In this document: positions 1,476 through 61,289 of the stretch, one piece after another
How the letters are laid out: each line of letters opens with the position of its first letter
Numbering within the stretch: position 1 is the first letter of the stretch
Made by a program: the position numbers and the translations under genes
IMG/VR virus record: IMGVR_UViG_3300045996_002337
Span: 124,001 to 188,000 of that record
Length of the DNA stretch: 64,000 nucleotides
Reading direction: 5' to 3' (one strand)
The notes under the pieces: generated by a model
Told to the model about the DNA's origin: nothing
Seen by the model: only the letters and a program-made list of their open reading frames with translations
Database searches by the model: none

Positions 1476-1817
1476 TCAGGCCTTTTTAACGTAGTGGGCA
1501 GTCATTGCGATCCGGACTTCAGGATTTGCCAATTGAGCGCAAACCGCTTTGAGGCCTTCAGCTGTTTCGTAGAAATAATCGACGATGAACACCCCCTCAA
1601 TCCCGAAGAGGCGGACAGTATCACCAACCCGATAGGAGCCAGTGTTACACGTGTATTCCAGCAGTTCAAGCTGATCCGGCAGAAAGAAATCCACCGTCGA
1701 ATCGGCGATCTGCTCTGCCTTAATCATGTTGAGAGCAAATCCCTTGATACAATATTCGGGAGAGCCACGTTTTCCAGCTTCGCGAACGATTTGGCCGACT
1801 TCGAAGGTGATGTTCAT
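1476..1817 (-). CDS. Hypothetical protein, predicted leaderless, with two VGQ/VGD-x-V beta repeats
   Basis: 113 aa; TATAAT-N6-ATG. Confidence 0.6.
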   Translation of the reverse strand: MNITFEVGQIVREAGKRGSPEYCIKGFALNMIKAEQIADSTVDFFLPDQLELLEYTCNTGSYRVGDTVRLFGIEGVFIVDYFYETAEGLKAVCAQLANPEVRIAMTAHYVKKA

Positions 1818-1823
1818 GAATGA

Positions 1824-1852
1824 ATTATATCCATAACATCACAGGTTGTACA
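1824..1852 (-). promoter_or_regulatory. Promoter TGTACA-N17-TATAAT
   Basis: Seen directly; -10 box ends 6 nt before the ATG. Confidence 0.7.
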
Positions 1853-1855
1853 CAA

Positions 1856-2173
1856 CTATTTTCCTGCTTTTATGCAGGCCAAAAGAAATGTTGCGCGATC
1901 GTCGGCGTTAGCGTCCTTGGTGATCTTAGTTGGGGGCGTCACCTCTTTCTCGCCAATTTGGCAGGTGATTACCCCGTCGAGCTTGCACACAACTGGGTCT
2001 TTTGATTTCTGTGGTGCAATGATCACAGTCTCTGGCGCACGAGGGTAATTAAGATTTGCCTTAATCTCGCATGTGGCCCGCAGTCGCGTTGTGTCGTCAA
2101 TGGTGGATTGGTTCATTGGCTGTGGAGACGAGCACCCCGCCAATGTGAGCAACAGAATCTGGTGAATACGCAT
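1856..2173 (-). CDS. Putative lipoprotein
   Basis: MRIHQILLLTLAGC lipobox; start reassigned to 2173. Confidence 0.6.
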   Translation of the reverse strand: MRIHQILLLTLAGCSSPQPMNQSTIDDTTRLRATCEIKANLNYPRAPETVIIAPQKSKDPVVCKLDGVITCQIGEKEVTPPTKITKDANADDRATFLLACIKAGK

Positions 2174-2177
2174 ATGC

Positions 2178-2330
2178 TTACCCCCAAAAATGTAGGGCAA
2201 GCGTCAACATCAAATTTACAGCAAAAAGCCCGGCAACTGCATGTTGAAGTCGCTTGATCTGTTTTGTCTGCTTTTCATCTACTTTGTTAAGATCTGTTTT
2301 TGTGACCGCGTTGTCACTTAGTATCTTCAT
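2178..2330 (-). CDS. Small membrane protein (50 aa)
   Basis: Manual translation MKILSDNAVTK...AVAGLFAVNLMLTLALHFWG; fills the intergenic gap. Confidence 0.55.
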   Translation of the reverse strand: MKILSDNAVTKTDLNKVDEKQTKQIKRLQHAVAGLFAVNLMLTLALHFWG

Positions 2331-2344
2331 GATGGTAGAAAATC

Positions 2345-3064
2345 CTATTCGTAGACCACCTCTCCCTTTTTCAAGGTTACTGGTGTCTGTTGGTTGATGT
2401 TGATGGGTGTAACTGCCTTACCCGGCTTTTTATATGAAGTGTTTTCGGATAGGCCAGATTCAAACCTCGCGTCTGAGTCTGCGGCAATCTCTGATATCTT
2501 GATCTTAATCGGTTCTGCTTTATTCTTCGATGGAGAAGGAAGTGGGGTACGCACCGGCGTAAATGTCTTCTTAGTGGTTTCCTTCATCAACTTTAAACTT
2601 TCGGCTTGAGGTGTCTTCGGCGCAGGAGGAGGGGCCGGCGTGTAAGTTGGAGTTGGAGGAACTACTGGCTTTTCTGGTGGCAGTGGCGTGGGCTCTTCAA
2701 CCTTCTTCAATGGCACCGCCCCACCCTCATCTTCCCATGTCTCAGTTTGTTGAGGGGTTTGGGTTGGAGTTGGAGGTGTGATTGTTTCTGCTGCAATAGA
2801 CGCACGCGATGCAATTGTCATTTTCTTCTTAAGTGGAGTGAAGAGCCGGCTGTTAACAAGGACCTCCACCCGCACGTCATAGTCATTAGCAGTGAATTCT
2901 TCAGGAATGAATACGTCACTTACCCAGCTGTCACCACTCTTCACAGCGTTAAAGCTGAGGTCGGCGTTGGGCGTTTCAATTACGAAACGCACAATGGGAG
3001 CGGACGAGGAGCCGTTCACATTCACCTTGAACGAAACTTGATTGTGCTTGCCAATTTCTATCAT
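2345..3064 (-). CDS. Proline-rich hypothetical protein, probably virion-associated
   Basis: N-terminal beta-sandwich-like region plus P/T-rich linker; in the structural block. Confidence 0.6.
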   Translation of the reverse strand: MIEIGKHNQVSFKVNVNGSSSAPIVRFVIETPNADLSFNAVKSGDSWVSDVFIPEEFTANDYDVRVEVLVNSRLFTPLKKKMTIASRASIAAETITPPTPTQTPQQTETWEDEGGAVPLKKVEEPTPLPPEKPVVPPTPTYTPAPPPAPKTPQAESLKLMKETTKKTFTPVRTPLPSPSKNKAEPIKIKISEIAADSDARFESGLSENTSYKKPGKAVTPININQQTPVTLKKGEVVYE

Positions 3065-4859: not shown

Positions 4860-4895
4860 TATGCCATTGCTCCATTAGAATATGTATAGGCCATG

Positions 4896-15587: not shown

Positions 15588-16484
15588 TTACACCGCCATA
15601 TCCATCTTGATTGCAGGCTGAGAAACGTAATTTTCCAGTGCGATGTCAGCCATCGTGAACTTTTCGATGTCGTCGATGTCTGGGTTCAACTTCAGAACTG
15701 GGGGCAGTCCGGGGATGCGAAGCAGCTGCTCACGCGCACCGTCAAGGTGGTTGTTGTAGAGGTGCACGTCGCCCAGATTCATGATCAACCGATCCACAGC
15801 TAGGCCAGCTACTTGGGCGAGCATGTGTGTAAACAGCGCATAAGATGCGATGTTAAACGGAAGCCCGAGCATCGTGTCAACCGAACGCTGGTACATTTGG
15901 CATGAAAGCTTGCCCTTTGCGACGAAGAACTGCGCCATCATATGGCAAGGCGGCAATGCCATTTGATCGAGCTCGCCAGGATTCCAAGCGCTGATGATCA
16001 TGCGCCGGTCGGTGTTGTTCGTCTTCAGCTTCTTGACTAGCTCGAGCAGTTGATCAACCTCTTCTTCAAGGTGCCAAACATGTCCGTCTTTGTCTGGAGT
16101 TGCAACATGGCGACCTGTCCACCAATGACGCCATTGAACGCCATACACGCGACCAAGGTCACCATCGAACCGCGCCTTCGGTTTCCAGTAGTCGGCCTGC
16201 GCGTTGCCCGTCCAGATCGTAACTTTTGATGGATCGCGGGAGCCGTGTAGAATCTCTGCCAGCCGCCGCTCATCGCCCGATCCTTCGATAAACCAAAGTA
16301 GTTCAGACGTAACCGCCTTCCATGCCAGTTTCTTGGTGGTCATGGCAGGGAACCCGGCTTTCAGGTCGATGTCGAGGGTACGGCCGAACAGGGCGCGGGT
16401 GCCCACGCCGGTGCGATCGGTGCGATCATCGCCGTTTTCGAGAATATCTCTAACCAGAGACAAATATTGATTTTCCCAGGTCAT
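15588..16484 (-). CDS. thyA: Thymidylate synthase
   Basis: DRTGVGT, MALPPCH, YQRSVD, GLPFNIASY (Asn, dUMP-specific). Confidence 0.97.
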   Translation of the reverse strand: MTWENQYLSLVRDILENGDDRTDRTGVGTRALFGRTLDIDLKAGFPAMTTKKLAWKAVTSELLWFIEGSGDERRLAEILHGSRDPSKVTIWTGNAQADYWKPKARFDGDLGRVYGVQWRHWWTGRHVATPDKDGHVWHLEEEVDQLLELVKKLKTNNTDRRMIISAWNPGELDQMALPPCHMMAQFFVAKGKLSCQMYQRSVDTMLGLPFNIASYALFTHMLAQVAGLAVDRLIMNLGDVHLYNNHLDGAREQLLRIPGLPPVLKLNPDIDDIEKFTMADIALENYVSQPAIKMDMAV

Positions 16485-17005
16485 ACTTTCACCTTAATAT
16501 ATTTTGAATCTACTGAACTTACGAGCCATACGCCATTTTCAGATTTGAAGAAAATGATGCCGTCGGTAAGCATTTGCGCTGCGTCGATTTCAAATACCGC
16601 AACATCGCCACGGCGCCGACCCCCAACATCTCTTGCCTCTTGTTCTTCGGCGGTGAGGTGAACGTAGTGCCGCTTCATTGGCTTAATGCCAGATTTTTTA
16701 ATTCCCTCGGCCGCGTCCTTTGTCGTACCGTGATACAGCGTCGGTGGTGGAATTGCTTTTGCGAAGGTCAGGCGAACTTGGCTGGTGCTGTGCCCCTGAT
16801 TTGCACGAATCTTCTTGCCATCTTCTGATATGGAATATCGCTGCTTTGGGTCTAGTTCAACGATTGACTTCATTTCAGCAATGGTAAATCCTGCACTTTT
16901 GACAAGGTCTTCCATGGAAGCCCAGCCGTCACGATCTAATTTTAGACCTTTAGCTTCAGGACGGTGTCTTAGCAAGAAGGACAGAAATTTTGATCGTTCA
17001 TTCAT
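16481..17005 (-). CDS. kptA: RNA 2'-phosphotransferase (Tpt1/KptA)
   Basis: SKFLSFLLRH, IRANQGHS, LYHGT, RHYVHL, SENGVWL. Confidence 0.95.
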   Translation of the reverse strand: MNERSKFLSFLLRHRPEAKGLKLDRDGWASMEDLVKSAGFTIAEMKSIVELDPKQRYSISEDGKKIRANQGHSTSQVRLTFAKAIPPPTLYHGTTKDAAEGIKKSGIKPMKRHYVHLTAEEQEARDVGGRRRGDVAVFEIDAAQMLTDGIIFFKSENGVWLVSSVDSKYIKVKV

Positions 17006-17564
17006 TGGTGTATTGTATCAACTCTGACGGTAGAAGTCCACGCGTATGCAGGTCAAGTAGCACCCATGTGACAAGCTTGTGGGTTGAATGAAAGTGGTGC
17101 GTGTCGTTGCCCGTGTCGCGGTTGCCCGCCACATTTAATACATGAATGCGATTTTTGATTATCCAATGAACCACCGGTTTAACCTGCTCATTAAGCCATT
17201 CGTTAGTGTAGTCGCGATCTACTTGGATTCTGAGGAGGGGCTTCTTCGTCTTTTCTGCAAAATTTGCGGTGAGGGTGCACCCAGGTGATGCCAGATTTGA
17301 GGCGATGATAAGTGTACCATCCGACCGCTCTACGTTAACACGCGTACGCGGGGCATAGCTAAATGACGCGTGTTCAGCCAAACCAAAGACATCACGCAGC
17401 CTGAGATTTGGCCCCGTTTGTGTACGATACCCGAGCGGTGCGGTACCGCCAGTTGCAACTCCCATTTCGCGAGCTGCGTGGAGACCGCCTTGGTCTGCAC
17501 CAACCTGACCACCAGAAATCACCTTGAAGAGGCCAACAAAATCAGGTTCGTGAAATGTCAACAT
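16998..17564 (-). CDS. SLOG/putative molybdenum-carrier family nucleotide-binding protein
   Basis: VISGGQVGADQGGL...RTRVNVERSDGTL...LNVAGNR. Confidence 0.8.
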   Translation of the reverse strand: MLTFHEPDFVGLFKVISGGQVGADQGGLHAAREMGVATGGTAPLGYRTQTGPNLRLRDVFGLAEHASFSYAPRTRVNVERSDGTLIIASNLASPGCTLTANFAEKTKKPLLRIQVDRDYTNEWLNEQVKPVVHWIIKNRIHVLNVAGNRDTGNDTHHFHSTHKLVTWVLLDLHTRGLLPSELIQYTNE

Positions 17565-19445: not shown

Positions 19446-20846
19446 TTACTCTTCAGCGTCAAGTACGTTTTCTTCGTACTTGAATGCCTTCAATTCCCGC
19501 TTGTACATATCGTTCGCGGTATCGGACTCGAGCGTAGCGTAGTAAGTCTTCGATTCACCAAGCTTTTTCTCCAGCTCGGCGATCTTGTCCTTCGTCAGGT
19601 TCCAGATCGGCATGCCCAAGAGTTTGTCATAGTCAGCGAACTTTTCGCTCAGCAAAAGCGCAATCAGTTCCTTCTTCGACGTATCACGGAAGAGCTTGAC
19701 GTTTGCGAGATAGAAACGAATGAATCGAATCTGTTCGCTCATCCAGCGAATTGCTTCCGCCGTATCGCTCATGAGCTTTTGGCGACGCTTCTCATAGAAG
19801 CTGAGCCGCCAAACAGTGTACATCGTAATGATGTCTTCCGCGGACTCGAACCGTTGGAGCACGCCTTCAGCGTTCCAGAGGGTGAAGTTTTCGGACTCGC
19901 GGGCGACAAGCTTGAACTTTTGATACAACTGATCTTCAGACATCGCGGTCGTAGAACGCGGAACCGTCACCTTGAAGCAGAAGCTTTGCTCAGTCGACGA
20001 GTCTTCATAGTCCTTGATAACTTCTTCTTCCTCAAGACGGTTGAGGATTGCCTTGTAGTCATCAAGGAAGCGACCAACCGGCAGCTCGGTGATCATGATT
20101 GTGGTGGAGTTCACAACCTCAAGCTTGCCGGTCGTGACGATCTGTCCATTTTCATTACGAGAGACCGAGCCTTTGAAGCCGCCGAGGGCCCGGAACCAAG
20201 GGACGAGGGTGCCAGGAACCAGCTTCTTACCATCCAGAACCTTGAGTGTGGCATCACGAACATGCATCGGATGATAAGGCTTGATCTCGACGCTGTGGCC
20301 AGTACCGATGCCTGTGGCGCCGTTAATCAAGGCGAGCGGGAGAATCGGGAGGTAGAATTTTGGCTCGATCTTTTCGCCGTCAACGATGTGGTGCTCGAGA
20401 ATGATGTCATCCTCTTTCTTGCACAGCATGCGGAAGTTCTCAGAGAGCTTCGTCTTGATGTAGCGACCAGCACCAGGATCACGCGTAAGGCGCGAACCGA
20501 ATTGGCCCTTCGGGCTGAAGAGGTTCATGTTGTTCGAGCCAGCGTACTTCACTGCAGCGAGGCCGGCAAGAGTCGACTCCATCGAGCCAGTGCCGTGGTG
20601 GTAGTCGGTGAGTTCCGCGATCGAGGCTGCAAGTCGCGCAACGACGTGAAAGTTGGCGTTCTCACCCTTCAGGTACGTGCCGTAGATGGCCTTACGCTGC
20701 GATGGTTTGAGACCGTCAATTCCAGGAATCGAACGAACGTTGTCGTAAAGCGAGAACGTTTTGAACGCAGAGTTGAAGAAGTTGCGTGCGCTGATCGATT
20801 GCGTCGTCGTGGAGCCGTGCTTTGAAACGATGTTGATTTTCTTCAT
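19446..20846 (-). CDS. 52: DNA topoisomerase II medium subunit (T4 gp52/GyrA-ParC-like)
   Basis: RSIPGIDGLKPSQRK, YHHG, GQFGSR, GAGRYI (catalytic Tyr), NGATGIGTG; start reassigned to MKKINI. Confidence 0.95.
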   Translation of the reverse strand: MKKINIVSKHGSTTTQSISARNFFNSAFKTFSLYDNVRSIPGIDGLKPSQRKAIYGTYLKGENANFHVVARLAASIAELTDYHHGTGSMESTLAGLAAVKYAGSNNMNLFSPKGQFGSRLTRDPGAGRYIKTKLSENFRMLCKKEDDIILEHHIVDGEKIEPKFYLPILPLALINGATGIGTGHSVEIKPYHPMHVRDATLKVLDGKKLVPGTLVPWFRALGGFKGSVSRNENGQIVTTGKLEVVNSTTIMITELPVGRFLDDYKAILNRLEEEEVIKDYEDSSTEQSFCFKVTVPRSTTAMSEDQLYQKFKLVARESENFTLWNAEGVLQRFESAEDIITMYTVWRLSFYEKRRQKLMSDTAEAIRWMSEQIRFIRFYLANVKLFRDTSKKELIALLLSEKFADYDKLLGMPIWNLTKDKIAELEKKLGESKTYYATLESDTANDMYKRELKAFKYEENVLDAEE

Positions 20847-20871
20847 AGGTCTATTATACACCAGTTTTCAG

Positions 20872-21111
20872 TTATCGTGTTGCGTTAAGGGGACGCCACG
20901 GGCTTTTACCAAGCCGAAGACGATTGTAGCGGACTGTGGCTCGCATCCAAAATAGCGCCCGCCCGTTCATTTCTTCAGTCGGCTCGTTACCAGTGAGAAT
21001 AGAATAGTTTATCCCGTCTGATACCGCCGCCATCATGATGTCATGCGCGAGCAAGGCGCACTTCTTTGCCAGCTTGCGCCGTTCCCAACCACGAATAAGT
21101 TTAGTGATCAT
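20872..21111 (-). CDS. Hypothetical protein between the topoisomerase subunits
   Basis: ATGA overlap with the gp39 stop gives MITKLIRGW... Confidence 0.55.
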   Translation of the reverse strand: MITKLIRGWERRKLAKKCALLAHDIMMAAVSDGINYSILTGNEPTEEMNGRALFWMRATVRYNRLRLGKSPWRPLNATR

Positions 21112-23072
21112 TCTGCGCTCTTCACGATGAATTCTTCGAAGTCGGCTGCGGGAGTTTCCAGCCATGCCTTGCGATCGTCAGCACGTTGACCATTGAACGC
21201 GAGGTCAATTGCGTCCTTGTCATCTTCATCTTCCATCGTGACCTTGAAGAGATATGTGTCCAGATTTTGAAGGAACTTGGCGAACTCCTTCGTCTCCCAC
21301 TGCGAGAGGCCTTTGTAGTACTCATGCGCCCAACCGCGGAGCTTGACGCCTTCGGACTCTTCCCAATCGTGGAAGTCGCGTTCAGTGAAGAACTCAAGAT
21401 TCGGCTTGCCCTTCATTCGAACAACCACCACGGGGGTGCGAAGGATGTGGATGAAACCCATCTTGAACAGCTCAGGCCAGAACGTGTCGATCATGTTCAT
21501 CAGCAGACCACAGATGTGGAAGCCGTCTACGTCGGCGTCAGATGCAATCGCGAGCTTGCCGAAGCGCAGCTCAGCGAGTGACTTCACAGGCACACCAATT
21601 TGGAGGCCGATGATCGTGAGAATCTTTTGGATCTCGTTCGGTTCGACCTTCTTGCCTGCTTGTTCTTTTTCCTTCTTCTTGTCGAGACCCAACACACGGG
21701 TGATTTCCTTTTCACGCACGTTCAGCGGCTTACCCTTGAGAGGGAAAGAGGCGATGTATGGGTTGGAACCACGGCCACCTTGTACGGACTTGGCAGCAGA
21801 ATCACCCTCAGCCAGGAAGAGTACGCACTTGTGACGTTGCGTCCGTTCCATCGCGTCAGAAAACTTGTCCACCTTACGAGGATCAGATTTCGTTTGCTCC
21901 TTGCCGGCCTTACGCAGTTCCTTTTGGAGTTCGGCGTTGGCTTTCGCTTCGGCCCAATCAAGGATGGACTGAATGATCTCGGTCTTGAGCAGCTTCTGAA
22001 TGAACTTGTCAGAGACAGTCCAGGACGTCTTCCACTCGCTCGGCAGAGAAATCATGTTCTCCTTCGTCTGCGAGGAAAAACGCGGGCGGTTCACGTTTGC
22101 GCTGATATAGATGCGCATGTGACCGCGGATGTCACCTGGTGAAACGTCGACCTTGTGCTTTTTCTTGATGATCGTGCGGAGTTCATCGACGATCTGGTTG
22201 ATCGCGTACTTGACGTGCTCGCCACCTTGGTACGTTTCGACAGAGTTCACGAAGCTGATCTGCTCGAACCCATCGGACTTGGAGATGCCGACCTTCCAGT
22301 CGGGGGTCTCGTCGTAGACATATTCGTCGGCGTACATCGCGATGTAGTCATCGAAGTTGCGGGTCATGATCCGCTCGCCGTTCACGTAGAACTTGACCTT
22401 CGGGTTCGTGGCGGCCGCGTCCACGACCTTCTTGATCATACGCAGCTTGTGATCTTCGTCGAGACCCTTCAGCTTGAAGAACTCGTAGTCGGGGGTGAAG
22501 GTGATCTTCGTGTGGTTCTTGTCGTGATCACGAATCTTCGGTTCGCTGCGTTCGCGCATGCCGTTGAAGAACTCTTGGCGGAAGAGCTTCTTGCCATCAC
22601 ATGACTCGATCTTGAAGGACGTCGAGAGCACGTTCGTGAGCGTGGAACCGACGCCGTTGGTGCCGATAAGCTGCTGATCTTCTTCGTCGTTGAAGTTGGA
22701 GCCGGCGCGGAGGTTCGAGAACACCGTTTCTGCGATGTACTTGCCGGTCTGCGGGTGGAGCTGAACGGGGATGCCGCGGCCGTTGTCGGTCACCGAGATG
22801 GTGCCATCGTCGTTGATTTCAACGCGAATGGCGTCGAGAACATCTGGTGCACGACGGCTTTCGTCGATCGCGTTGTCGAGAATTTCAGAGAAGATCTTGA
22901 TGAAGGCAGGGATCACGCTGATCTGCTTGCGAACCATCTTCTTGGTTTCGGTGTCGTAGACCCACTGATCTGCGGTCTCAAGCGCGGTCGAACCCGCGTA
23001 CATGCCAGTACGTTTGCGGATGTGTTCGATTTCGTCGAGAACTTGGTAGGTTTGAGCGATGTGTTTTGTCAT
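21108..23072 (-). CDS. 39: DNA topoisomerase II large subunit (gp39+60 unsplit; GyrB/ParE-like)
   Basis: EHIRKRTGMYAG, EILDNAIDE, DNGRGIP, GTNGVGS, LAEGDSA, DADVDG, YYKGL. Confidence 0.96.
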   Translation of the reverse strand: MTKHIAQTYQVLDEIEHIRKRTGMYAGSTALETADQWVYDTETKKMVRKQISVIPAFIKIFSEILDNAIDESRRAPDVLDAIRVEINDDGTISVTDNGRGIPVQLHPQTGKYIAETVFSNLRAGSNFNDEEDQQLIGTNGVGSTLTNVLSTSFKIESCDGKKLFRQEFFNGMRERSEPKIRDHDKNHTKITFTPDYEFFKLKGLDEDHKLRMIKKVVDAAATNPKVKFYVNGERIMTRNFDDYIAMYADEYVYDETPDWKVGISKSDGFEQISFVNSVETYQGGEHVKYAINQIVDELRTIIKKKHKVDVSPGDIRGHMRIYISANVNRPRFSSQTKENMISLPSEWKTSWTVSDKFIQKLLKTEIIQSILDWAEAKANAELQKELRKAGKEQTKSDPRKVDKFSDAMERTQRHKCVLFLAEGDSAAKSVQGGRGSNPYIASFPLKGKPLNVREKEITRVLGLDKKKEKEQAGKKVEPNEIQKILTIIGLQIGVPVKSLAELRFGKLAIASDADVDGFHICGLLMNMIDTFWPELFKMGFIHILRTPVVVVRMKGKPNLEFFTERDFHDWEESEGVKLRGWAHEYYKGLSQWETKEFAKFLQNLDTYLFKVTMEDEDDKDAIDLAFNGQRADDRKAWLETPAADFEEFIVKSAE

Positions 23073-23078
23073 GTGTTA

Positions 23079-23107
23079 ATTATACAACGTTTCAACCTGT
23101 GCGTACA
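23079..23107 (-). promoter_or_regulatory. Promoter TGTACG-N17-TATAAT (leaderless geometry)
   Basis: Seen directly. Confidence 0.7.
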
Positions 23108-28353: not shown

Positions 28354-29057
28354 TTGATTCCCTGTTCAATATGTTGAATTGCCTTGTTCACGTCATCACC
28401 TGGAACTTGAAGATCCCATCGCGTAACGTTTGACCATGCTCGTTCTTCACCAGTGATGGAAAGGAGACGGTTGGTGTGAATATGAATAAGCTTCTCGGCC
28501 GCATCATGCATGTCCATTGATGTCAGCAGCGCAGAAACGTTCTGTGAGGATTTGGCGATATTGTGAAGCGCATTACGAATGTCCAGCGCGGTTCGGCGGT
28601 TCAGCCGGGCGATGCGCTCTGATTCAACGGTGTGTACGTAGATCTTGAAGATTTCCCATCCATTGTCTCTACACAGCTGCTCGTACATCTCGAGACCCTT
28701 CGGTTCCAAGATCACGATCGGCGCCCTGTCACCGTGCATCTTACCTTGCATTTCTTTATGCGTCACGCCGTAACGAACGCCCTGAAATGTGATGAGCTCT
28801 GCGAACTCACCGTTCTTTTCCATTGCCAACGATTGCTCAACGCTAATGAAGTTGTAGTCAACTCCTTCCACCTCACCATCGCGCCGCGCACGTGTAGTGG
28901 TGCTGACGATGCGCGAGAACATTGGCTCGAACTGATAGGCCTGCCCTCGCTTTGCCACGGCAGCAGGATCCGGTTTCGTCATCGCATCAAGCAGGTACGA
29001 CTTGCCAGAGCACGTAGGGGCCGTCATTGTGACGAGAGTAGGTTTGTCAAATTTCAT
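28317..29057 (-). CDS. gmk: Guanylate kinase-like NMP kinase
   Basis: APTCSGKS, STTTRARRDGEVEGVDYNF, GVRYG. Confidence 0.75.
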   Translation of the reverse strand: MKFDKPTLVTMTAPTCSGKSYLLDAMTKPDPAAVAKRGQAYQFEPMFSRIVSTTTRARRDGEVEGVDYNFISVEQSLAMEKNGEFAELITFQGVRYGVTHKEMQGKMHGDRAPIVILEPKGLEMYEQLCRDNGWEIFKIYVHTVESERIARLNRRTALDIRNALHNIAKSSQNVSALLTSMDMHDAAEKLIHIHTNRLLSITGEERAWSNVTRWDLQVPGDDVNKAIQHIEQGIKWRNYRNAQLNT

Positions 29058-29104
29058 GATGCAATTATACCAAAGTTAGATCTTGTTACAAATGAGTCGT
29101 AGGT

Positions 29105-36346: not shown

Positions 36347-37416
36347 ATGAATCCCGGGCCGCGTTTGCGACGTTGATTGTCGCTAGGTTGCTGGCAAAAG
36401 AGCTCTGCCAGAGTAACGCGCGTCTTGCCTTCTGGCACCTGCCCCTTGCCAGTTTCCTTGATGATTACTTCCGCTTCCGAGACGGTCAGAGGCCGAAATT
36501 CAACGACGTCAAAACAGCGGCCGGGCCGCATGAGAGCCGGGTCGATATCTGAGATGTTCGGCAGGTTGGTCGAGAAGATCATCTTCTTGTCGGAAGCCGA
36601 GATCAGACCATCCGACACGTTCAGAAATTTGTGCATCATGGTGTTGCCGTCTGCGCGTGATTGGAGGAACGCGTCTGCATCTTCCATCACGAGAAAGCGA
36701 CTGTCATCATCAATGAAGCCAGCGAACAGACCGTCGTCCATCATCACCTTCTCATCGTACGCGACCTTTGCATTTCCACCGGAGCGGTGGATCAGGTTCT
36801 TGATGAAGGTCGTCTTGCCAGTTCCCGGTGGGCCAATCAAGATCAGGACGCTGGCATCCGAATTCAGGTAATCGTCGATGTAGTCGATCAGGTTCTTCTG
36901 GATCCACGGATACGCACCGTTGATGGCCGGGCGGTAGTTCAGTGGAACGCGAATCGTATCACCTCGGGTGGAGTAGACCCACTCGATCAGGCTTTGGGCC
37001 CGCCGGAAATGTTCGTCAAAGCAACTAACCCACCGCTTAACCCACTCCATATCCCCGATATGCTCAACTGCAAGTTTGCCACGGGAGTGAGTGATGCGAA
37101 GAATTCCAGAGCTTTCAACGATCACCACACGCTGGGCGGAGTAGAAGGTGAATTTCTTCGCGCGATCAGGAACCCACTCTGCGAGAGAGAAACCTGCCGG
37201 TACGAGCCAGGTAACGTCGATCTGGATCGTAGCGGCACCACTCAGGTGCCGCTGGCGAAGGACATCCGCCAGAACCCATTCCTCTGAGCCGTAAACGCCG
37301 AGCACGACTTCGTTTCGTTCGACTGTTCTCGGCGCAAAAATGTGGGCGTCGTCCATTGCAGTGTCGTGCTGCTCAGGCAGCGACTCGAAATAATCTTGAT
37401 GGGCTGAATAGTTCAT
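36343..37416 (-). CDS. AAA+ ATPase (BCS1-like)
   Basis: GPPGTGKT, LVMEDAD, LNVSDG, FSTN...DPALMRPGRCFD. Confidence 0.88.
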   Translation of the reverse strand: MNYSAHQDYFESLPEQHDTAMDDAHIFAPRTVERNEVVLGVYGSEEWVLADVLRQRHLSGAATIQIDVTWLVPAGFSLAEWVPDRAKKFTFYSAQRVVIVESSGILRITHSRGKLAVEHIGDMEWVKRWVSCFDEHFRRAQSLIEWVYSTRGDTIRVPLNYRPAINGAYPWIQKNLIDYIDDYLNSDASVLILIGPPGTGKTTFIKNLIHRSGGNAKVAYDEKVMMDDGLFAGFIDDDSRFLVMEDADAFLQSRADGNTMMHKFLNVSDGLISASDKKMIFSTNLPNISDIDPALMRPGRCFDVVEFRPLTVSEAEVIIKETGKGQVPEGKTRVTLAELFCQQPSDNQRRKRGPGFI

Positions 37417-37434
37417 AATGAGATTATAACTCGT

Positions 37435-43320: not shown

Positions 43321-44213
43321 TTGTATTGCTCCAGTTCAGGCGGAACTTCCAGCCCTTGTTCTTTTAGGTCGTCCATCGTGTTCTTGAAGATGGTCGATGC
43401 GTCTTTTCGTTTCCGAATGATATTTACGATCTGCTCAACTGACATCACGTCCTTTGCCTTCACACCTTTCCCAAACATCAGCGAGGCAGCTTGATCTGGG
43501 TCGGTGATTGGGTCTGAGCTTGGATCAAACTTGTGATCCAGCCCCATTCTTTTTAGCTCAGCAGAAACTTCTTCAGCTGTTGCCTTGGCAAGGTTCTTGG
43601 TTCGTCCCTTGCCATCCTTGCGCATTGGACGCACCTTAAAGAGTCGCTCAAGCCCAACGTCTGCCTTGAAGGAGCGTCGAACCCGAATCACTGGCTCTCC
43701 ATCCTCAGGGTCCTTGACCTCTAGGTCCTTGCCAGGTTCGAAGATCTGCTTCATCATGTTCACGAAGAGCAGGGACCGAACGGCACCTTTGTACTTAGAA
43801 TCGGGTGCTGAGTGAAATGAGAATTTCGCCCACTTCTTTGAGGGGACAAACATCAGGTCAACTTGTACCTTCCGATCACCGGGGACCGGGACTGCAAAGG
43901 AGAAAACACCAGCACCGGCTCGGTGAATTTCGTCCGTGCCAGTTGCGTCGAGCATCTTCTGAATCACTGCCTCACGATCTACTGAACCTTCCTCAACCGC
44001 GATGTCAATGTCACCGGAGTCCTGTTGCTTTCCAGCAAGGGTCTTCTCAGTGGACCCAATAAGACTGGTTTTGATCTCATCGAGATCCAGCCCAGCATGC
44101 TTCGCCACAAATTTGAGCGCCGACTTGATATCATTCGCGCTCGCCCGGGTCGTGCCCATGTGGGCGGTAGATTTACCGCTGGACTTAGCCTCGAAAAGCT
44201 GTTTCAACTTCAT
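43317..44213 (-). CDS. Pol-beta superfamily nucleotidyltransferase
   Basis: LIGS...SGDIDIAV...VQVDLM; MKLKQLFE N-terminus; CTAAATA upstream. Confidence 0.75.
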   Translation of the reverse strand: MKLKQLFEAKSSGKSTAHMGTTRASANDIKSALKFVAKHAGLDLDEIKTSLIGSTEKTLAGKQQDSGDIDIAVEEGSVDREAVIQKMLDATGTDEIHRAGAGVFSFAVPVPGDRKVQVDLMFVPSKKWAKFSFHSAPDSKYKGAVRSLLFVNMMKQIFEPGKDLEVKDPEDGEPVIRVRRSFKADVGLERLFKVRPMRKDGKGRTKNLAKATAEEVSAELKRMGLDHKFDPSSDPITDPDQAASLMFGKGVKAKDVMSVEQIVNIIRKRKDASTIFKNTMDDLKEQGLEVPPELEQYK

Positions 44214-44251
44214 ATGTCTATTTTAACCTTAGGCAAAATTTTGTACACCTC

Positions 44252-46272: not shown

Positions 46273-47060
46273 TTCGATCGCAAGTTTACAGCAAGCAGCA
46301 CATGGGCCTTGGGCTCAGTGACGGTTCTTCAGCGGCTAACGCTGGCGGGTCCGCGCTTCAAATCAAGCAACGTACAGGCACCACCACAAATGGCCTGTAC
46401 TGGATCAAGCCGCCAAATGGACCTGCGGAGCAGGTGTGGTGTGACATGAACACGGCTGGTGGTGGATGGATTTTGATTGCGCGAACTCACCCTTCGTTCT
46501 CTCCAACGATGGGAACCTTTGGTTGGAACTCGTCAACGCTGATTGGTGGAGCCACTACATTCGGCGCCGGTTATCACCTAGGTCTAAAGCGCTTGACTGA
46601 TGCAGGTTTTTTATTCAACTCGTTCATTTATGGCAATCAACGAGACATCGTAAGCAACGAATGGGGTCCTTTCGTTTATCAGGTTGGGATTTATACGCCG
46701 ATTTCATTCATGGGAAACATAGATCCACCCGAGCGCTTAAACGAACGGTCGACGGTCAAAATGGATTTGAACGTGTATGGGAGCTCTGCATTTCCTCCCA
46801 TGCAGCAATACATGAGTCCTAGAGAAACGACAACAACGAATGAGAATTTATTCAACATGCGAGATGTTACCCCATCATCGGGATATGGTATTTCCCCAGT
46901 TGGCATGTTAACAGGTTACTGTAATTCTGCGGGGGTGCCATGGTATGCAGGCGCATTCTGCAATGGGGCGACCTTAAGCGGCAATGACTGGGTGCAGGGT
47001 GGGTCCTCATTAGTTACGAACATGGGCGGTACGAGTCAAGTGATGCTCATGGTCCGGTAA
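46269..47060 (+). CDS. Fibrinogen-like (FReD/lectin) domain protein
   Basis: NGLYWIKP...QVWCDMNTAGGGWILIAR. Confidence 0.75.
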   Translation: MIRSQVYSKQHMGLGLSDGSSAANAGGSALQIKQRTGTTTNGLYWIKPPNGPAEQVWCDMNTAGGGWILIARTHPSFSPTMGTFGWNSSTLIGGATTFGAGYHLGLKRLTDAGFLFNSFIYGNQRDIVSNEWGPFVYQVGIYTPISFMGNIDPPERLNERSTVKMDLNVYGSSAFPPMQQYMSPRETTTTNENLFNMRDVTPSSGYGISPVGMLTGYCNSAGVPWYAGAFCNGATLSGNDWVQGGSSLVTNMGGTSQVMLMVR

Positions 47061-53011: not shown

Positions 53012-53268
53012 TCGATAAGCTCCTTTAGATTTTCAACCGGTGGGATGGGGCCACGTGAAAAACGGCTGTAGAAAAGATCAGTGCACGACTTTGGGCCGAT
53101 GTAATCATAGTTGACGTAGTAGTCTGGTACTGGAAGTTCTCGATCTTTCATCGCTTCCATGCTATATTTCAGCGCCTCAGCTTCAGTTCTGAACGTCAAG
53201 TATCCGCTGATTCTTGAACCCCAGCCCCGCTCATATTCAACACGCTCTATAACGTAAACAATCTTCAC
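53005..53268 (-). CDS. Hypothetical protein
   Basis: 87 aa coupled ORF. Confidence 0.55.
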   Translation of the reverse strand: MKIVYVIERVEYERGWGSRISGYLTFRTEAEALKYSMEAMKDRELPVPDYYVNYDYIGPKSCTDLFYSRFSRGPIPPVENLKELIEC

Positions 53269-53942
53269 GGTTGTTCCAATGTTTCCTGCTTTGGCTCATA
53301 TGCGTTCATGATGTGCTCAATCAGCTGCAATTGGTTGATCAGTTGCAACTTGATGTTCTCGAACACGCCTTCTTGGTCAGGGAACCGACGACGGGCAAGC
53401 TTGATACGGTGCAGGAACTCTTCGACGGTTTCTTTGATGTAGCGCTCAAGGCGAGCTGGCTTGAACACACCAAACATCGTTGCAACGTTGTTTGCGCGGT
53501 CACCCGCTTTCACGACCGCGGTGTCTTCATCCGCGAAGATGGTATCAAGGCTGTAATCTGGGTTCTTGATGCCCATGATTTCCTTAGACAGCTTGCGAAC
53601 TTTTTCGGCGATCTGATCACCCCAAAGCTGCGAAACTTCTTCAAGCGAGACGTAGTGCTTTTGCTTCGTTTCTTTATCAGTGCGCGGGTCTTCAACTGCG
53701 TCGTGAAGGAACACGAGGATATAAACCGTCACCGGGTTGCGGATGTGCCGGTGCAAGGTGCGAAGGTCGTGAAAGATGCTCAACTGGTGGATGAACTCCG
53801 GTTCACCGCCGTTGCGCAGTCCGTCGTGGTGGGCTGCGCCATATTCCATGGCTTCGAGGACCTTGAAATAACGGTGATCAGACTCCGCCATTCCAAGAAG
53901 CCAGTAGCGGGCGGCGATCATCAGCTTTTCGTATTTGGTCAT
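53265..53942 (-). CDS. HD-domain (p)ppGpp hydrolase-like protein (SpoT/Mesh1-type)
   Basis: AHHDGLR.GGEPEFIH...LHDAVED...VKAGDRANN. Confidence 0.75.
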   Translation of the reverse strand: MTKYEKLMIAARYWLLGMAESDHRYFKVLEAMEYGAAHHDGLRNGGEPEFIHQLSIFHDLRTLHRHIRNPVTVYILVFLHDAVEDPRTDKETKQKHYVSLEEVSQLWGDQIAEKVRKLSKEIMGIKNPDYSLDTIFADEDTAVVKAGDRANNVATMFGVFKPARLERYIKETVEEFLHRIKLARRRFPDQEGVFENIKLQLINQLQLIEHIMNAYEPKQETLEQP

Positions 53943-53968
53943 AAGTTTATTATAACACAAAAGCGCGA

Positions 53969-55823: not shown

Positions 55824-56150
55824 TTAGTCCTTGAGCTCAAGGCCGTGGCGCTCAGCCAGGTCGGTGCGGCGCTGATGAAAGTCGATGAACTTACCATCGA
55901 CGCGATATACCCAATCACCGGAGAGCGGGTTGCCGCGAGGGGTGAGACCATACTCACGTTGAACAGCGTGAAGTTGATCGTCGGCGACCGCGTTGTAGCA
56001 GTCATCAGCAAATTTGGTGAGTGTGATTTTCATGTTCCTATTATAACTAACCGGGACAGGTTGTACAACGGAAAATTGTAACGGGTTTGGCTGTTTGCAC
56101 TGATGCGAAGAATGGCCGCCCTGAAGGCAGCGAACGCAGATTTTCGTCAT
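55824..56150 (-). CDS. Protein with N-terminal CCHC zinc knuckle; nested in-frame start at 56033
   Basis: CVRCLQGGHSSHQC; internal promoter at 56040-56067. Confidence 0.55.
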   Translation of the reverse strand: MTKICVRCLQGGHSSHQCKQPNPLQFSVVQPVPVSYNRNMKITLTKFADDCYNAVADDQLHAVQREYGLTPRGNPLSGDWVYRVDGKFIDFHQRRTDLAERHGLELKD

Positions 56151-56197
56151 GCCATTTTCTCCTACAGATCAGCTTGCAGTTGGGTGTTCATAGATGT

Positions 56198-56226
56198 ATT
56201 ATACATCGTGAACCTGCGTTTGTACA
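56198..56226 (-). promoter_or_regulatory. Promoter TGTACA-N17-TATAAT
   Basis: Seen directly. Confidence 0.7.
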
Positions 56227-58881: not shown

Positions 58882-58925
58882 GGTATTTCCTTTCAACGTT
58901 ACGGCTGCGCATGCAGCAAAAGAGA

Positions 58926-59442: not shown

Positions 59443-59471
59443 ATTGTAAGCAGTTTGTGCGCGTTTGGACA
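59443..59471 (-). promoter_or_regulatory. Promoter TGTCCA-N17-TACAAT, followed by late-like TATAAATT
   Basis: Seen directly; defines a leader of about 550 nt. Confidence 0.6.
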
Positions 59472-59485
59472 CCTTTTTACGTAGG

Positions 59486-60031
59486 TTAAAGGTCCCTGGC
59501 GTAAAACAGGCCGTTAACCATTGCAAAGGTCTTTGTGTCGTCCTTTGGGAAAAGAGGGATTCCACGACCATCAAGACACGCAAGTGAATGATAGAAGTAC
59601 TTTTCTTCCTGACTTGTCTGCGGATCCATTACAACGATCCATTCGTGGATGTCCACGTCGCCGAAACGGCCGACAATTTCTTCAGAGCAGTCAGCTACCT
59701 CTGAGATACCCGCGACGCCGAGCGTCTCAAGTGCCTGCGCATGTTCTTCTGTTCCAACTTTAATCTCGCCGTTGCTAAGCGCATCATCAAGGTTGTTGAT
59801 GCCGAGTCGCATGTGTTCGGCTTCAAGATCTTCTTGTGTGATCACGGTTCCAAGATAAACCGCGGCAAGAGTAATGCTCGCGTAGTACGTGATGATCCCA
59901 AGCGGAATTAGAAAGATCGTGTACCAGAATGGAAGATTGAAGACGACAAGCAGGGTCGCAAGAACCATGCCAAGTGCCCACGTCTTTCGAACCCGCTCCA
60001 TCGTGGAGACAATACGCTGTTGTACGTTCAT
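59486..60031 (-). CDS. Membrane-anchored hypothetical protein
   Basis: Two TM helices plus acidic domain. Confidence 0.6.
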   Translation of the reverse strand: MNVQQRIVSTMERVRKTWALGMVLATLLVVFNLPFWYTIFLIPLGIITYYASITLAAVYLGTVITQEDLEAEHMRLGINNLDDALSNGEIKVGTEEHAQALETLGVAGISEVADCSEEIVGRFGDVDIHEWIVVMDPQTSQEEKYFYHSLACLDGRGIPLFPKDDTKTFAMVNGLFYARDL

Positions 60032-60047
60032 GATTTCCAATCGTTGT

Positions 60048-60209
60048 TTACCACACACCAATCACGTGCAACAGGACGATGCTGTTAAGCACGAGAGCGA
60101 TCATCGCACACACGGTCCTGATCACCTCCATGCGGTGGCTCCAGAGCTTTTTTCGCTTTCGCTCTGAAGCCTTCTCCGCTTTTTCCTGCTCAGTCATCGC
60201 CCGTGTCAT
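60048..60209 (-). CDS. Small membrane protein (53 aa)
   Basis: Manual translation MTRAMTEQEK...VCAMIALVLNSIVLLHVIGVW. Confidence 0.55.
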   Translation of the reverse strand: MTRAMTEQEKAEKASERKRKKLWSHRMEVIRTVCAMIALVLNSIVLLHVIGVW

Positions 60210-60802
60210 TAGTGCCCTCTTGCACGGATGTCATCCCAAACACGCGAATGTGTTGGAATAAAACCACACAGGTATTCCATCTGGCACGCGAGAACGTTTC
60301 GGTTCTCGAGAATCAGCGCTTCAGCCCAGTTCGGGGCGTACGGCACGTACAGGAGCTTCATGCCACATTCTTCCAGAAGCTGGTCATCCTTGTCATGGTT
60401 GCAGTCAAGGCACGCTGTGACAACGTTGGTCCACACGTCCTTGCCGCCGCGAGAAGTCGGGATCACGTGGTCGCGAGACAAGTGAGAATCACGGAACAGT
60501 CGGCCACAGTAAGCGCACAGCATGCGGTCACGGCGGAACAGTTCCGGGTTCGTCAGGGTCGGCGTCTTGTTCATCCGCTTTGCGGCACCTGGCGACTTTC
60601 CCTTGATAGCGATAATCGGAGCAGTTGTGATTCGCGACTGCGTGCCAGTCAAGCGGTTATCTCCACCACGGAAAAGAATGTCGCCCTCGCCTTCACCAAG
60701 CTGCCATGCAACAAGGTTCTTGGCGTGGTAAACGATTGCGTCCTGGTGGGAGCACCATTCCTTCGGTTGGCCCGAAGCGTCGAGTGTCAAAATTCTGCTC
60801 AT
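60209..60802 (-). CDS. HNH endonuclease
   Basis: RRDRMLCAYCG...DHVIPTSRGG...NVVTAC..CN..K. Confidence 0.9.
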   Translation of the reverse strand: MSRILTLDASGQPKEWCSHQDAIVYHAKNLVAWQLGEGEGDILFRGGDNRLTGTQSRITTAPIIAIKGKSPGAAKRMNKTPTLTNPELFRRDRMLCAYCGRLFRDSHLSRDHVIPTSRGGKDVWTNVVTACLDCNHDKDDQLLEECGMKLLYVPYAPNWAEALILENRNVLACQMEYLCGFIPTHSRVWDDIRARGH

Positions 60803-61254
60803 GATTTCCTCAAGATTTCTTCTAAGCGTTCCACGTATTTCACGTGGTCCTTGCGACCTTTTTGTTTGAAACTATCTAACGACATCCAAGTTGTGAACTC
60901 TGTCTCGTCACACCACTTGTCAAAGTCATACTTGTCCATGATCTCAACACCAAACACCGCGAGATCATAGGTGCCAGAATGAAGGGTCACCCTTTCATCT
61001 GCAATCTCAAACAACGGAAGACGCATGTTCCGTTGTTTGAAGCCAAGTTCTTCTTCAGCTTCACGAATCGCCGCCTGGAGCTTTGTCTCGCCTGGCTCGA
61101 TTTTCCCTTTCGAGATCATCGGACGTGGCCCGCCGAAACGGGGATCTGAGCTGACCATCATCAAATAACGGTATTGACCGTCATCTGCCTTCATGTAGGG
61201 GATGAGACCTGCTCGAGCCCGTTTTTCGTATCCAGTTTCGTCAATGTTGTGCAT
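60799..61254 (-). CDS. Nudix hydrolase
   Basis: Nudix box GKIEPGETKLQAAIREAEEELG; TATAAT-N6-ATG. Confidence 0.88.
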   Translation of the reverse strand: MHNIDETGYEKRARAGLIPYMKADDGQYRYLMMVSSDPRFGGPRPMISKGKIEPGETKLQAAIREAEEELGFKQRNMRLPLFEIADERVTLHSGTYDLAVFGVEIMDKYDFDKWCDETEFTTWMSLDSFKQKGRKDHVKYVERLEEILRKS

Positions 61255-61260
61255 GAAGCA

Positions 61261-61289
61261 ATTATAACCTGAAAAACCCGCTCTGTAAA
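61261..61289 (-). promoter_or_regulatory. Promoter TTTACA-N17-TATAAT
   Basis: Near-consensus sigma70. Confidence 0.75.

What the first reader, a model, noticed from the sequence alone, without database searches (positions are those of the whole stretch)
1817..61266. Systematic TA(T/C)AAT-N6-ATG geometry, implying leaderless mRNAs for key early genes
Seen: ten minus-strand ATGs lie exactly 6 nt after a -10 box, with no usable Shine-Dalgarno: 1817, 17005 (tpt1), 20846 (gp52), 23072 (gp39), 29057 (gmk), 37416 (AAA), 53942 (HD), 56033, 56191 (9-aa minigene MNTQLQADL) and 61254 (Nudix). Most other genes have a normal SD. Established: sigma70 initiates about 7 nt after the -10 box, so the TSS would fall on the A of ATG. 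Inference: a leaderless translation class including both topoisomerase subunits, possibly robust to host translation shut-off or anti-SD-damaging toxins.
Basis: partly seen in the sequence, partly recalled or inferred. Interest (0 to 1): 0.7.

Follow-up and report, generated by a model that had tools for sequence, protein, structure and literature searches.

The report
Leaderless early genes in a jumbo phage
In this uncultivated 350-kb soil phage, about 30 genes, including both topoisomerase II subunits, start 5-6 bases after a host-type promoter's -10 box, so their mRNAs very probably begin at the AUG; this is a known expression mode found in a new and conserved setting, and no RNA data exist to prove it.

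Summary
All ten sites exist as described: 10 matches in the window against 0.47 expected. In the whole 349,660-bp phage genome, TAYAAT-N6-ATG occurs 25 times and -N5-ATG 12 times on the coding strand, against about 1 in shuffles.

- **Real gene starts:** 30 of the 37 ATGs open ORFs of at least 60 codons. Usually there is an in-frame stop a few codons upstream and no SD-led alternative downstream. Five Pfam domains begin at residues 2-7 of the proposed N-termini.
- **The A at N6 is the general +1:** the same promoter type (TGTACA-N16/17-TATAAT-N6-AT) also drives about 49 SD-led genes with 17-30 nt leaders.
- **Only ATG is enriched,** not GTG or TTG.
- **Conserved in relatives:** gp39 and gp52 orthologues in metagenomic relatives (57-80% aa identity) keep the N5/6/7 spacing although the intervening bases differ.

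So a leaderless class of early/middle genes read by host sigma70 is well supported in silico. It is unproven, because no RNA data exist.

- The 9-codon "minigene" at 56191 is probably an incidental +1 AUG on an SD-led transcript.
- 56033 is ambiguous.
- 17005 and 37416 could also use translational coupling.
- The "shut-off-proof" idea has no support.

This is a new member of a known kind: Thermus phage phiYS40, and hosts in the Burkholderiales.

The parts
1815..1852 (-). Promoter TGTACA-N18-TATAAT-N6 plus ATG (1817) of a 113-aa ORF (1476-1817, no family hit)
   Evidence: In-frame stop 7 codons upstream and no upstream alternative start. One weak downstream alternative (AAGG) at codon 30.
17003..17040 (-). 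TGGACT-N17-TACAAT-N6-ATG (17005) of Tpt1 RNA 2'-phosphotransferase (16481-17005)
   Evidence: Pfam PTS_2-RNA matches residues 4-163 to profile 6-176. The ATG overlaps the end of the upstream ORF by 8 nt, so coupling is also possible. The G003 orthologue is not leaderless.
20844..20858 (-). TATAAT-N6-ATG (20846) of the topoisomerase II medium subunit (gp52-like, 19446-20846, 466 aa); no clear -35
   Evidence: Orthologues in L032, L033, L034, L036, L037 and L040 (66-81% id) keep TATAAT-N5/6-ATG, and G003 has TAAAAT-N6-ATG.
23070..23107 (-). TGTACG-N17-TATAAT-N6-ATG (23072) of the topoisomerase II large subunit (gp39-like, 21108-23072, 654 aa)
   Evidence: Stop 1 codon upstream. The N-terminus MTKH... 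is conserved from residue 1. Relatives L029, L033 and L036/37 have N6 and L030/G003 has N7. L031, L038 and L041 have 23-29 nt spacers (leadered), with SD-like cores in L038 and L041.
29055..29091 (-). TTGTAA-N16-TATAAT-N6-ATG (29057) of a guanylate-kinase-domain protein (28317-29057, 246 aa)
   Evidence: Stop 6 codons upstream and no alternative start. The G003 orthologue has no -10 box next to its ATG (AAAGG lies just upstream).
37414..37428 (-). TATAAT-N6-ATG (37416) of an AAA ATPase (36343-37416, 357 aa); the promoter overlaps the 3' end of the upstream gene
   Evidence: Only 18 nt from the upstream gene's stop, so reinitiation is a rival here.
53940..53954 (-). TATAAT-N6-ATG (53942) of an HD-type phosphohydrolase (53265-53942, 225 aa)
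   Evidence: The G003 orthologue has TACAAT-N7-ATG.
56031..56067 (-). TGTACA-N16-TATAAT-N6-ATG (56033); 69-aa ORF, in frame inside the 108-aa ORF 55824-56150
   Evidence: Coding score +20.5 downstream of 56033 and -6.6 upstream of it. However, phrog_23667 aligns from residue 29 of the long form. Ambiguous: a true start or an internal promoter.
56163..56226 (-). TGTACA-N17-TATAAT-N6-ATG (56191) plus a 9-codon ORF whose TAG overlaps the AGGAG SD of the ATG at 56150
   Evidence: Most simply a leadered promoter (41-nt leader) with an incidental +1 AUG. A leaderless uORF is not excluded.
61252..61289 (-). TTTACA-N17-TATAAT-N6-ATG (61254) of a NUDIX hydrolase (60799-61254, 151 aa), preceded by a terminator-like hairpin
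   Evidence: The G003 orthologue starts at the same MHN residues. The upstream in-frame ATG at 61395 would read through the hairpin.
44211..44247 (-).
   Evidence: This is the first start of the ORF. No Pfam or PHROG hit.

Best explanation
The window belongs to an uncultivated 350-kb jumbo phage with a T4-like transcription programme. It has no RNA polymerase of its own and encodes a gp55-like late sigma factor. Its early/middle genes are read by the host's housekeeping sigma70 holoenzyme from strong promoters of the form TGTACA-N16/17-TATAAT. Transcription starts at an A six (sometimes five) bases after the -10 box. At about 49 of these promoters the transcript has a 17-30 nt leader with a Shine-Dalgarno site. 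At about 30 of them the +1 A is the A of the gene's ATG, so the mRNA starts with AUG and has no leader. These mRNAs would be translated by the leaderless route: 70S or 30S ribosomes with fMet-tRNA recognise a 5'-terminal AUG, using host factors only. Shown here: the geometry, its statistics, that the ATGs are the true gene starts, and conservation of the spacing in relatives. Inferred: the exact start site, the early timing, and the translation route. The class covers replication (topo II large and medium subunits, primase), nucleotide metabolism (guanylate kinase, NUDIX, HD) and RNA-repair genes (Tpt1, PNK-like, CCA/poly(A) polymerase family, cREC). I see it mainly as a compact way to give single genes their own promoter, in a host lineage (probably Betaproteobacteria) whose ribosomes already translate leaderless mRNAs.
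For: Statistics. Only ATG is enriched: at N5/N6, ATG 12/25, GTG 0/0, TTG 2/3. This fits the known need for a 5'-terminal AUG. The shared +1: ATC (17) and ATA (14) are also enriched at N6, and the same promoter type drives SD-led genes with short leaders. True starts: an in-frame stop lies 1-7 codons upstream at most sites, and the coding-score optimum coincides with the ATG at 23 of the 27 strict sites that my gene caller picked up. 24 of 30 have no downstream SD-led start within 40 codons. Pfam domains begin at residues 2-7 for Tpt1, cREC_REC, PolyA_pol, Fer2_BFD and Metallophos. The first 45 nt are less structured than other CDS starts (-4.4 vs -6.7 kcal/mol, p = 4e-4) and equal to the 5' ends of leadered transcripts. 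Conservation: 8 of 13 orthologue pairs with relative G003 keep a -10 box at N6/N7. gp39 and gp52 keep N5-N7 in relatives down to 57% aa identity, with different discriminator bases. Host polymerase: no RNAP beta homologue, and the nearest cultured relative, RsoM2USA, has no RNAP genes (PMC8504454). A separate late class, (C/T/A)ATAAATA, and a gp55-like sigma exist, and none of the late sites is leaderless. A -10 box about 12 nt upstream of the start codon, counted from its first T, is the accepted in-silico mark of leaderless genes (PMC3160421). It is experimentally validated in Deinococcus (PMC12340547) and seen at mapped start sites in Burkholderia and Cupriavidus (PMC4603805, PMC7563307).
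Against: No transcript 5' ends are available: no RNA run was listed, and the only DNA holder is a soil metagenome. Nearly all genes point the same way and few terminators are evident, so read-through transcripts must also carry these ATGs internally. Four of the 30 sites lie within 25 nt of the upstream gene's stop, where coupling could serve instead. About 7 of the 37 +1 ATGs open only 1-46 codons, which shows that some +1 ATGs are incidental. The -35 element is weak or absent at about 40% of the leaderless sites. The host is unknown. The betaproteobacterial assignment rests on a beta-type permuted tmRNA and on a Ralstonia phage as the nearest cultured relative.
Confidence: 0.75

Rival explanations
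1. The promoters are real, but the proteins are made mainly from longer read-through transcripts, by termination-reinitiation or coupling after the upstream gene or by SD-independent entry at an A/U-rich site. On this view the +1 = ATG coincidence just reflects tight packing of promoters into short intergenic gaps.
For: Genes are almost all co-oriented. The median gap from the upstream stop to the ATG is 47 nt, and 4 of 30 gaps are at most 25 nt (17005 overlaps the upstream stop; 37416 is 18 nt away). Few terminators are seen next to the sites.
Against: Eleven of 30 gaps exceed 60 nt and 15 are 26-60 nt, which is far for reinitiation without an SD. Packing alone does not predict the sharp N5/N6 peak, the ATG-only rule, or conservation of the spacing while the discriminator bases change. 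Leadered promoters of the same type fit an SD into only 17-30 nt, so space did not force loss of the SD.
Confidence: 0.12
2. The TATAAT next to the ATG is not a promoter here. It acts instead as an A/U-rich translation enhancer or ribosome standby site on a longer mRNA.
For: A/U-rich sequences upstream of start codons can promote SD-independent initiation (general knowledge). About 40% of the leaderless sites lack a good -35.
Against: The same hexamer sits 17 nt downstream of TGTACA in 33 cases, all on the coding strand. In about 49 further cases it lies 25-36 nt upstream of ATGs, with an SD in between. G at -14 is present at 24 of 30 leaderless sites. An enhancer would not need a spacing exact to one base.
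Confidence: 0.05
3. It is chance. The promoters prefer +1 AT, G follows in a quarter of cases, and the true starts lie downstream.
For: AT at N6 is followed by G 25, C 17, A 14 and T 3 times, so part of the raw ATG excess comes from the +1 AT preference. Seven of the 37 ATGs open only short ORFs, including 56191.
Against: Thirty of 37 open ORFs of at least 60 codons, against 32% for random ATGs. Twenty-two of 37 also sit just after an in-frame stop, against 7% (p about 2e-16). Domains start at residues 2-7. Orthologue N-termini align from residue 1.
Confidence: 0.03
4. This goes beyond the best explanation. The leaderless set is a specialised regulon that keeps replication and RNA-repair enzymes translated when SD-dependent initiation is impaired, either by the phage's own host shut-off or by host defences that damage rRNA or tRNA.
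For: The set is rich in RNA-repair and nucleotide genes (Tpt1, PNK-like, CCA/poly(A) polymerase, cREC, NUDIX, HD) and replication genes. Thermus phage phiYS40 is reported to shift the IF2/IF3 balance in favour of its leaderless mRNAs (PMC3594737). The geometry is kept for topo II across the clade.
Against: The phage has no IF1, IF3, S21 or MazF/PemK homologue and no initiator tRNA among its 51 tRNAs. Relatives switch the same genes between leadered and leaderless forms. SD-led genes share the same promoter type.
Confidence: 0.15

Closest known systems
Thermus thermophilus phage phiYS40 (and P23-45) leaderless middle/late transcripts
   Same: A large lytic phage that relies on host RNA polymerase and places a -10 element directly before many ORFs, so that many mRNAs lack a leader (PMC3594737; cited in PMC4842269 as 'promoters of leaderless bacteriophage genes' with extended -10 TGnTA).
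   Different: There it is the middle/late class, in a host phylum where about 40% of genes are leaderless (PMC3160421). Here it is the sigma70-type (presumably early/middle) class, often with a -35 element. The host is probably a betaproteobacterium, where a few percent of genes are leaderless. The late class here, (C/T/A)ATAAATA, is always leadered.
TA-led (leaderless) genes of bacteria: Deinococcus-Thermus, Actinobacteria, and Burkholderiales such as Burkholderia cenocepacia and Cupriavidus metallidurans
   Same: A TANNNT box about 12 nt upstream of the start codon, counted from its first T, no SD, and the start site on the start codon (PMC3160421, PMC12340547, PMC4603805, PMC7563307). In C. 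metallidurans leaderless mRNAs are enriched for replication/repair functions (PMC7563307).
   Different: These are cellular genes. In the phage the class makes up about 6% of genes but about 38% of its recognisable sigma70-type promoters (30 of 79), with a near-perfect TATAAT.
Phage lambda cI mRNA from PRM
   Same: The classic phage leaderless mRNA starting with AUG, translated by 70S ribosomes (PMC11514452 uses it as the model).
   Different: A single regulatory gene of a temperate phage, not a set of about 30 enzyme genes.
Jumbo phages with mapped start sites (phiKZ, AR9)
   Same: Genome size class.
   Different: phiKZ shows no leaderless transcript (PMC8244752). AR9 leaders are 26-491 nt (PMC5312081). 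Both use their own RNA polymerases, which this phage lacks.

Membership tests
Leaderless (TA-led) genes | -10 promoter element ending 5-7 nt upstream of the start codon | tested here: met
   Sharp peak at N6 (25) and N5 (12) against 0-4 at other spacings below N19; all ten window sites are N6.
Leaderless (TA-led) genes | Start codon is AUG, needed at the 5' terminus | tested here: met
   At N5/N6: ATG 12/25, GTG 0/0, TTG 2/3. Elsewhere about 17% of starts are GTG or TTG.
Leaderless (TA-led) genes | No Shine-Dalgarno site and no alternative SD-led start | tested here: met
   The 12 nt before the ATG are the box and the discriminator. 24 of 30 have no SD-led in-frame start within 40 codons. Stops lie 1-7 codons upstream.
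Leaderless (TA-led) genes | Transcript 5' end mapped on, or within a few nt of, the start codon | not testable with these tools
   No RNA run was listed for this phage. The only indirect support is that leadered promoters of the same type also have A at N6.
Leaderless (TA-led) genes | Protein actually starts at that AUG | tested here: inconclusive
   There is no proteomics. Support is indirect: domain boundaries at residues 2-7 and orthologue N-termini aligned from residue 1.
Sigma70 (housekeeping) promoters read by host RNA polymerase | -35-like and -10 hexamers 16-18 nt apart | tested here: met
   33 copies of TGTACA-N16-18-TA(A/T/C)AAT, all on the coding strand. 18 of 30 leaderless sites match TGTACA at 4 or more of 6 positions.
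Sigma70 (housekeeping) promoters read by host RNA polymerase | Phage lacks its own RNA polymerase | tested here: met
   No RNA_pol_Rpb2_6 match. A T7-type single-subunit polymerase was not searched for. The cultured relative RsoM2USA has no RNAP genes (PMC8504454).
phiYS40-type phage leaderless class | -35-less promoters with extended -10 (TGn) | tested here: not met
   TGn at only 11 of 30 sites and a -35 is present at most, although G at -14 is found at 24 of 30.
phiYS40-type phage leaderless class | Middle/late timing and a shift of host IF2/IF3 | not testable with these tools
   No expression data. The phage encodes no IF1 or IF3 homologue.
T4-type late promoters (TATAAATA, gp55) | TATAAATA-like box without a -35 | tested here: not met
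   The leaderless sites carry TATAAT or TACAAT. The (C/T/A)ATAAATA class is separate, and at all but two of the 47 motif copies the next called start lies at least 19 nt downstream.

The most novel reading that the evidence does not exclude
A clade of soil jumbo phages, probably of Betaproteobacteria, maintains a dedicated leaderless regulon for replication and RNA-repair enzymes. On this reading the regulon has been selected because translation of these genes then escapes damage to, or manipulation of, SD-dependent initiation during infection. That would make it a phage-encoded 'translation-mode switch' achieved purely by promoter placement.
Probability: 0.15. Interest if true: 0.7.

Novelty: new member of a known kind. 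Interest (0 to 1): 0.45.

Why it matters
If start-site mapping confirms it, this would be a clear case outside Thermus and the actinobacterial phages of a virus using leaderless mRNAs systematically: about 30 genes, or about 38% of its host-type promoters. The geometry is conserved for both topoisomerase II subunits across relatives that have diverged to 57% protein identity.

There is a practical side. Gene callers that expect an SD may misplace such starts in jumbo-phage genomes. The TATAAT-N6-ATG cassettes are compact, portable expression signals. The leadered and leaderless variants of the same gene among relatives offer a natural experiment on why leaders are gained and lost.

Tried and rejected
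- **RNA evidence:** two run searches found only one soil DNA metagenome holding 10% of the words, and no RNA run was listed.
- **Close cultured relatives:** megablast against phage records found nothing. The nearest cultured phage, Ralstonia phage RsoM2USA (48% aa identity in topo II), shows no enrichment (12 hits vs 6 in the control) and no promoter before its topo gene. Pseudomonas phage pf16 has annotated promoters abutting start codons, but not this motif.
- **Relatives G001 and G002:** little or no N6 excess.
- **Pattern counts in the large metagenome contigs of relatives:** these could not be run because the records are not held.
- **Generic promoter/terminator scan:** not informative, 14 promoter-like sites against 10.5 expected.
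- **Rfam on the window:** no RNA family.
- **Phage-encoded helpers of leaderless translation:** no S21, IF3, IF1 or MazF/PemK, and no initiator tRNA.
- **Rejected reading:** that the motif is a T4-type late promoter. The late class is a different motif and is always leadered.
- **phiYS40 primary paper:** it could not be read, so it is cited through PMC3594737 and PMC4842269.
- **Gene calls:** they come from my own crude codon-score caller, so genome-wide percentages are approximate.

Full report
**What the window is.** The window is bases 124001-188000 of a 349,660-bp virus record. CheckV rates it 97% complete, its GC content is 51%, and nearly all genes lie on the minus strand. The only sequencing run that holds part of it is a soil metagenome. 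The nearest cultured relative is Ralstonia phage RsoM2USA, at 48% aa identity in the topoisomerase II large subunit. Closer uncultivated relatives exist at 57-80% identity.

The phage has no RNA polymerase beta homologue. It does encode a gp55-like late sigma factor (phrog_234, E = 3e-29), 51 tRNAs and a betaproteobacterial-type permuted tmRNA. It therefore looks like a jumbo phage with a T4-like transcription plan that depends on host RNA polymerase, and its host is probably a betaproteobacterium. The host assignment is an inference.

**The observation.** All ten sites are exactly as described.
- The window holds 10 matches to TAYAAT-N6-ATG, against 0.47 expected.
- Across the genome, the minus strand has 164 TAYAAT boxes against 51 on the plus strand.
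- The distance from box to ATG shows a sharp peak at N6 (25) and N5 (12). Every other spacing below N19 gives 0-4. A broad hump follows at N19-N30.
- Dinucleotide shuffles give 1.26 (N6) and 1.10 (N5).

**Are these ATGs the gene starts?**
- Thirty of the 37 open ORFs of at least 60 codons. Twenty-two also have an in-frame stop within 13 codons upstream, against 7% for random ATGs (p about 2e-16).
- At most sites the stop is 1-7 codons upstream and there is no upstream alternative start.
- A codon-score gene caller that knows nothing of the motif picks the same ATG at 23 of the 27 strict sites it picked up.
- Twenty-four of 30 have no downstream in-frame start with an SD core within 40 codons.
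- Pfam domains begin at residues 2-7 of the proposed proteins: Tpt1 at 17005, plus cREC_REC, PolyA_pol, Fer2_BFD and Metallophos outside the window.
- The gp39 and gp52 orthologues align from residue 1.

**Is the box a promoter, and where is +1?**
- The boxes sit 16-18 nt downstream of a -35-like TGTACA in 33 cases, all on the coding strand.
- G at -14 is frequent.
- The same architecture drives about 49 genes that have an SD and leaders of only 17-30 nt.
- In that leadered set the base at N6 is again A followed by T. ATC occurs 17 times and ATA 14 times at N6.
- So A at N6 is the general +1 of this promoter class. This matches the established 7-nt distance from the -10 box and the pyrimidine(-1)/purine(+1) rule, since C or T precedes the A at 23 of 25 N6 sites.
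- Only ATG is enriched at N5/N6, not GTG or TTG. That is what leaderless initiation requires.
- The first 45 nt of these ORFs fold less stably than other CDS starts and as weakly as the 5' ends of the leadered transcripts.

**A caveat on the raw count.** Because +1 AT is a property of the promoters, some +1 ATGs are accidents. Seven of the 37 open only 1-46 codons.

The 56191 "minigene" is one of these. Its 9-codon ORF ends in a TAG that overlaps an AGGAG placed 8 nt before the ATG at 56150. This is most simply a promoter with a 41-nt leader.

The 56033 site lies in frame inside the 108-aa ORF that starts at 56150. Coding potential favours the short form, but a PHROG alignment reaches 11 residues upstream of it. 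I leave it ambiguous.

17005 overlaps the upstream gene's stop, and 37416 lies 18 nt after one, so coupling could contribute at both.

**Comparative evidence.** In the nearest large relative, G003 (257 kb), 8 of 13 orthologue pairs keep a -10 box at N6 or N7 although the proteins are only 42-80% identical.

For gp39:
- The window, L029, L033 and L036/37 (57% identity) have N6.
- L030 (G003) has N7.
- L031, L038 and L041 have 23-29 nt between the box and the ATG (leadered); L038 and L041 carry SD-like cores.
- RsoM2USA has no promoter there.

For gp52, L032, L033, L034, L036, L037 and L040 have N5 or N6, and all were verified as orthologues.

The discriminator bases differ between lineages while the spacing holds, which argues for selection on the geometry. 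The state is also labile: relatives switch between leadered and leaderless. G003 has only about 10 such sites (N5 1, N6 5, N7 4), against 37 here.

**Timing.** A second motif, (C/T/A)ATAAATA, lies 19-38 nt upstream of many ATGs on both strands, including the largest ORFs. Twenty-one of the 25 CATAAATA copies are upstream of gene starts. Together with the gp55-like sigma factor, this looks like a T4-type late class, and it is never leaderless. By exclusion the TATAAT class is early/middle. This fits its cargo:
- topo II (both subunits) and primase
- guanylate kinase, NUDIX and HD
- Tpt1, a PNK-like protein, CCA/poly(A) polymerase and cREC

**Mechanism and purpose.** The most likely mechanism is plain leaderless expression through host sigma70 and host ribosomes.
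- Burkholderiales hosts do translate such mRNAs. 4.67% of primary start sites are leaderless in Cupriavidus metallidurans, enriched for replication/repair functions. In Burkholderia cenocepacia, 72 genes have the start site on the start codon and a TA-rich motif directly upstream (PMC7563307, PMC4603805).
- I found no phage gene that would tilt initiation: no IF1, IF3, S21, MazF/PemK or initiator tRNA.
- A simpler reading is economy. The whole promoter plus start fits into a median 47-nt gap.

**Comparison with what is known.**
- The in-silico signature is the one defined by Zheng et al. (PMC3160421) and validated in Deinococcus (PMC12340547).
- The closest viral precedent is Thermus phage phiYS40, whose middle/late mRNAs are mostly leaderless (PMC3594737, PMC4842269).
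- phiKZ has none (PMC8244752), and AR9 has long leaders (PMC5312081).

I therefore rate this a new member of a known kind. What is notable is its setting: a jumbo phage of a probable proteobacterial host, the early/middle class, about 38% of the sigma70-type promoters (30 of 79), and conservation at the topoisomerase genes.

**Verdict.** The leaderless reading is well supported by sequence and comparative evidence (confidence 0.75) but awaits 5'-end mapping. The functional speculation is unsupported. Interest is moderate.

Noticed in passing
window 62092, 61604, 13263, 11844 (-); 40520, 44276 (+); genome-wide: A second promoter-like motif, (C/T/A)ATAAATA, lies 19-38 nt upstream of many ATGs on both strands, including the largest ORFs (2873, 975 and 766 aa). 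21 of the 25 CATAAATA copies lie upstream of gene starts. It looks like a T4-type late promoter class and matches a gp55-like late sigma gene at G000 46227-46916 (phrog_234, E = 3e-29).
   Followed up: partly
genome-wide; in the window e.g. 1852-1824, 56067-56040, 56226-56198: The sigma70-type promoters share a palindromic -35 (TGTACA, often TTGTACAA) and a conserved spacer motif, CAGGTTG(g/a), just upstream of the -10 box (or its complement AACCTG right after the -35). This could be a site for a phage or host factor.
   Followed up: no
G000 195139-250364 and 258611-259675 (outside the window): There are 51 tRNA genes but none with a CAU anticodon (no Met, fMet or Ile2). Two adjacent tRNAs have a CUA (amber-reading) anticodon and sit next to a permuted betaproteobacterial-type tmRNA (tag ANEANYRMAA). 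TAG is the stop codon of only 14 of 469 called genes.
   Followed up: partly
window 55824-56150 (-): A 108-aa ORF has an N-terminal CX2CX4HX4C zinc-knuckle-like motif. It carries a full promoter and an in-frame ATG (56033) inside it, so a long SD-led form and a short leaderless form may both be made.
   Followed up: partly
window 16481-17005; G000 331440-332684, 219618-220712, 106260-106613: The genome has a scattered RNA-repair toolkit: Tpt1, a PNK/RNA-ligase-like kinase, a CCA-adding/poly(A) polymerase family enzyme and a cREC receiver domain. All have the leaderless geometry.
   Followed up: no
window 61290-61310 (-): A GC-rich hairpin with a T-run (terminator-like) lies directly upstream of, and abuts, the -35 of the NUDIX promoter. 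The same hairpin-then-promoter arrangement is kept in relative G003, which is reminiscent of promoter/stem-loop cassettes in T4-type phages.
   Followed up: no
L010 (Pseudomonas phage pf16) 1243-1270 and 1457-1497: In the deposited annotation of pf16, putative promoters end 0-3 nt before the start codons of gp194 and of the topo II gene. The sequences do not carry the TATAAT-N6-ATG motif.
   Followed up: partly
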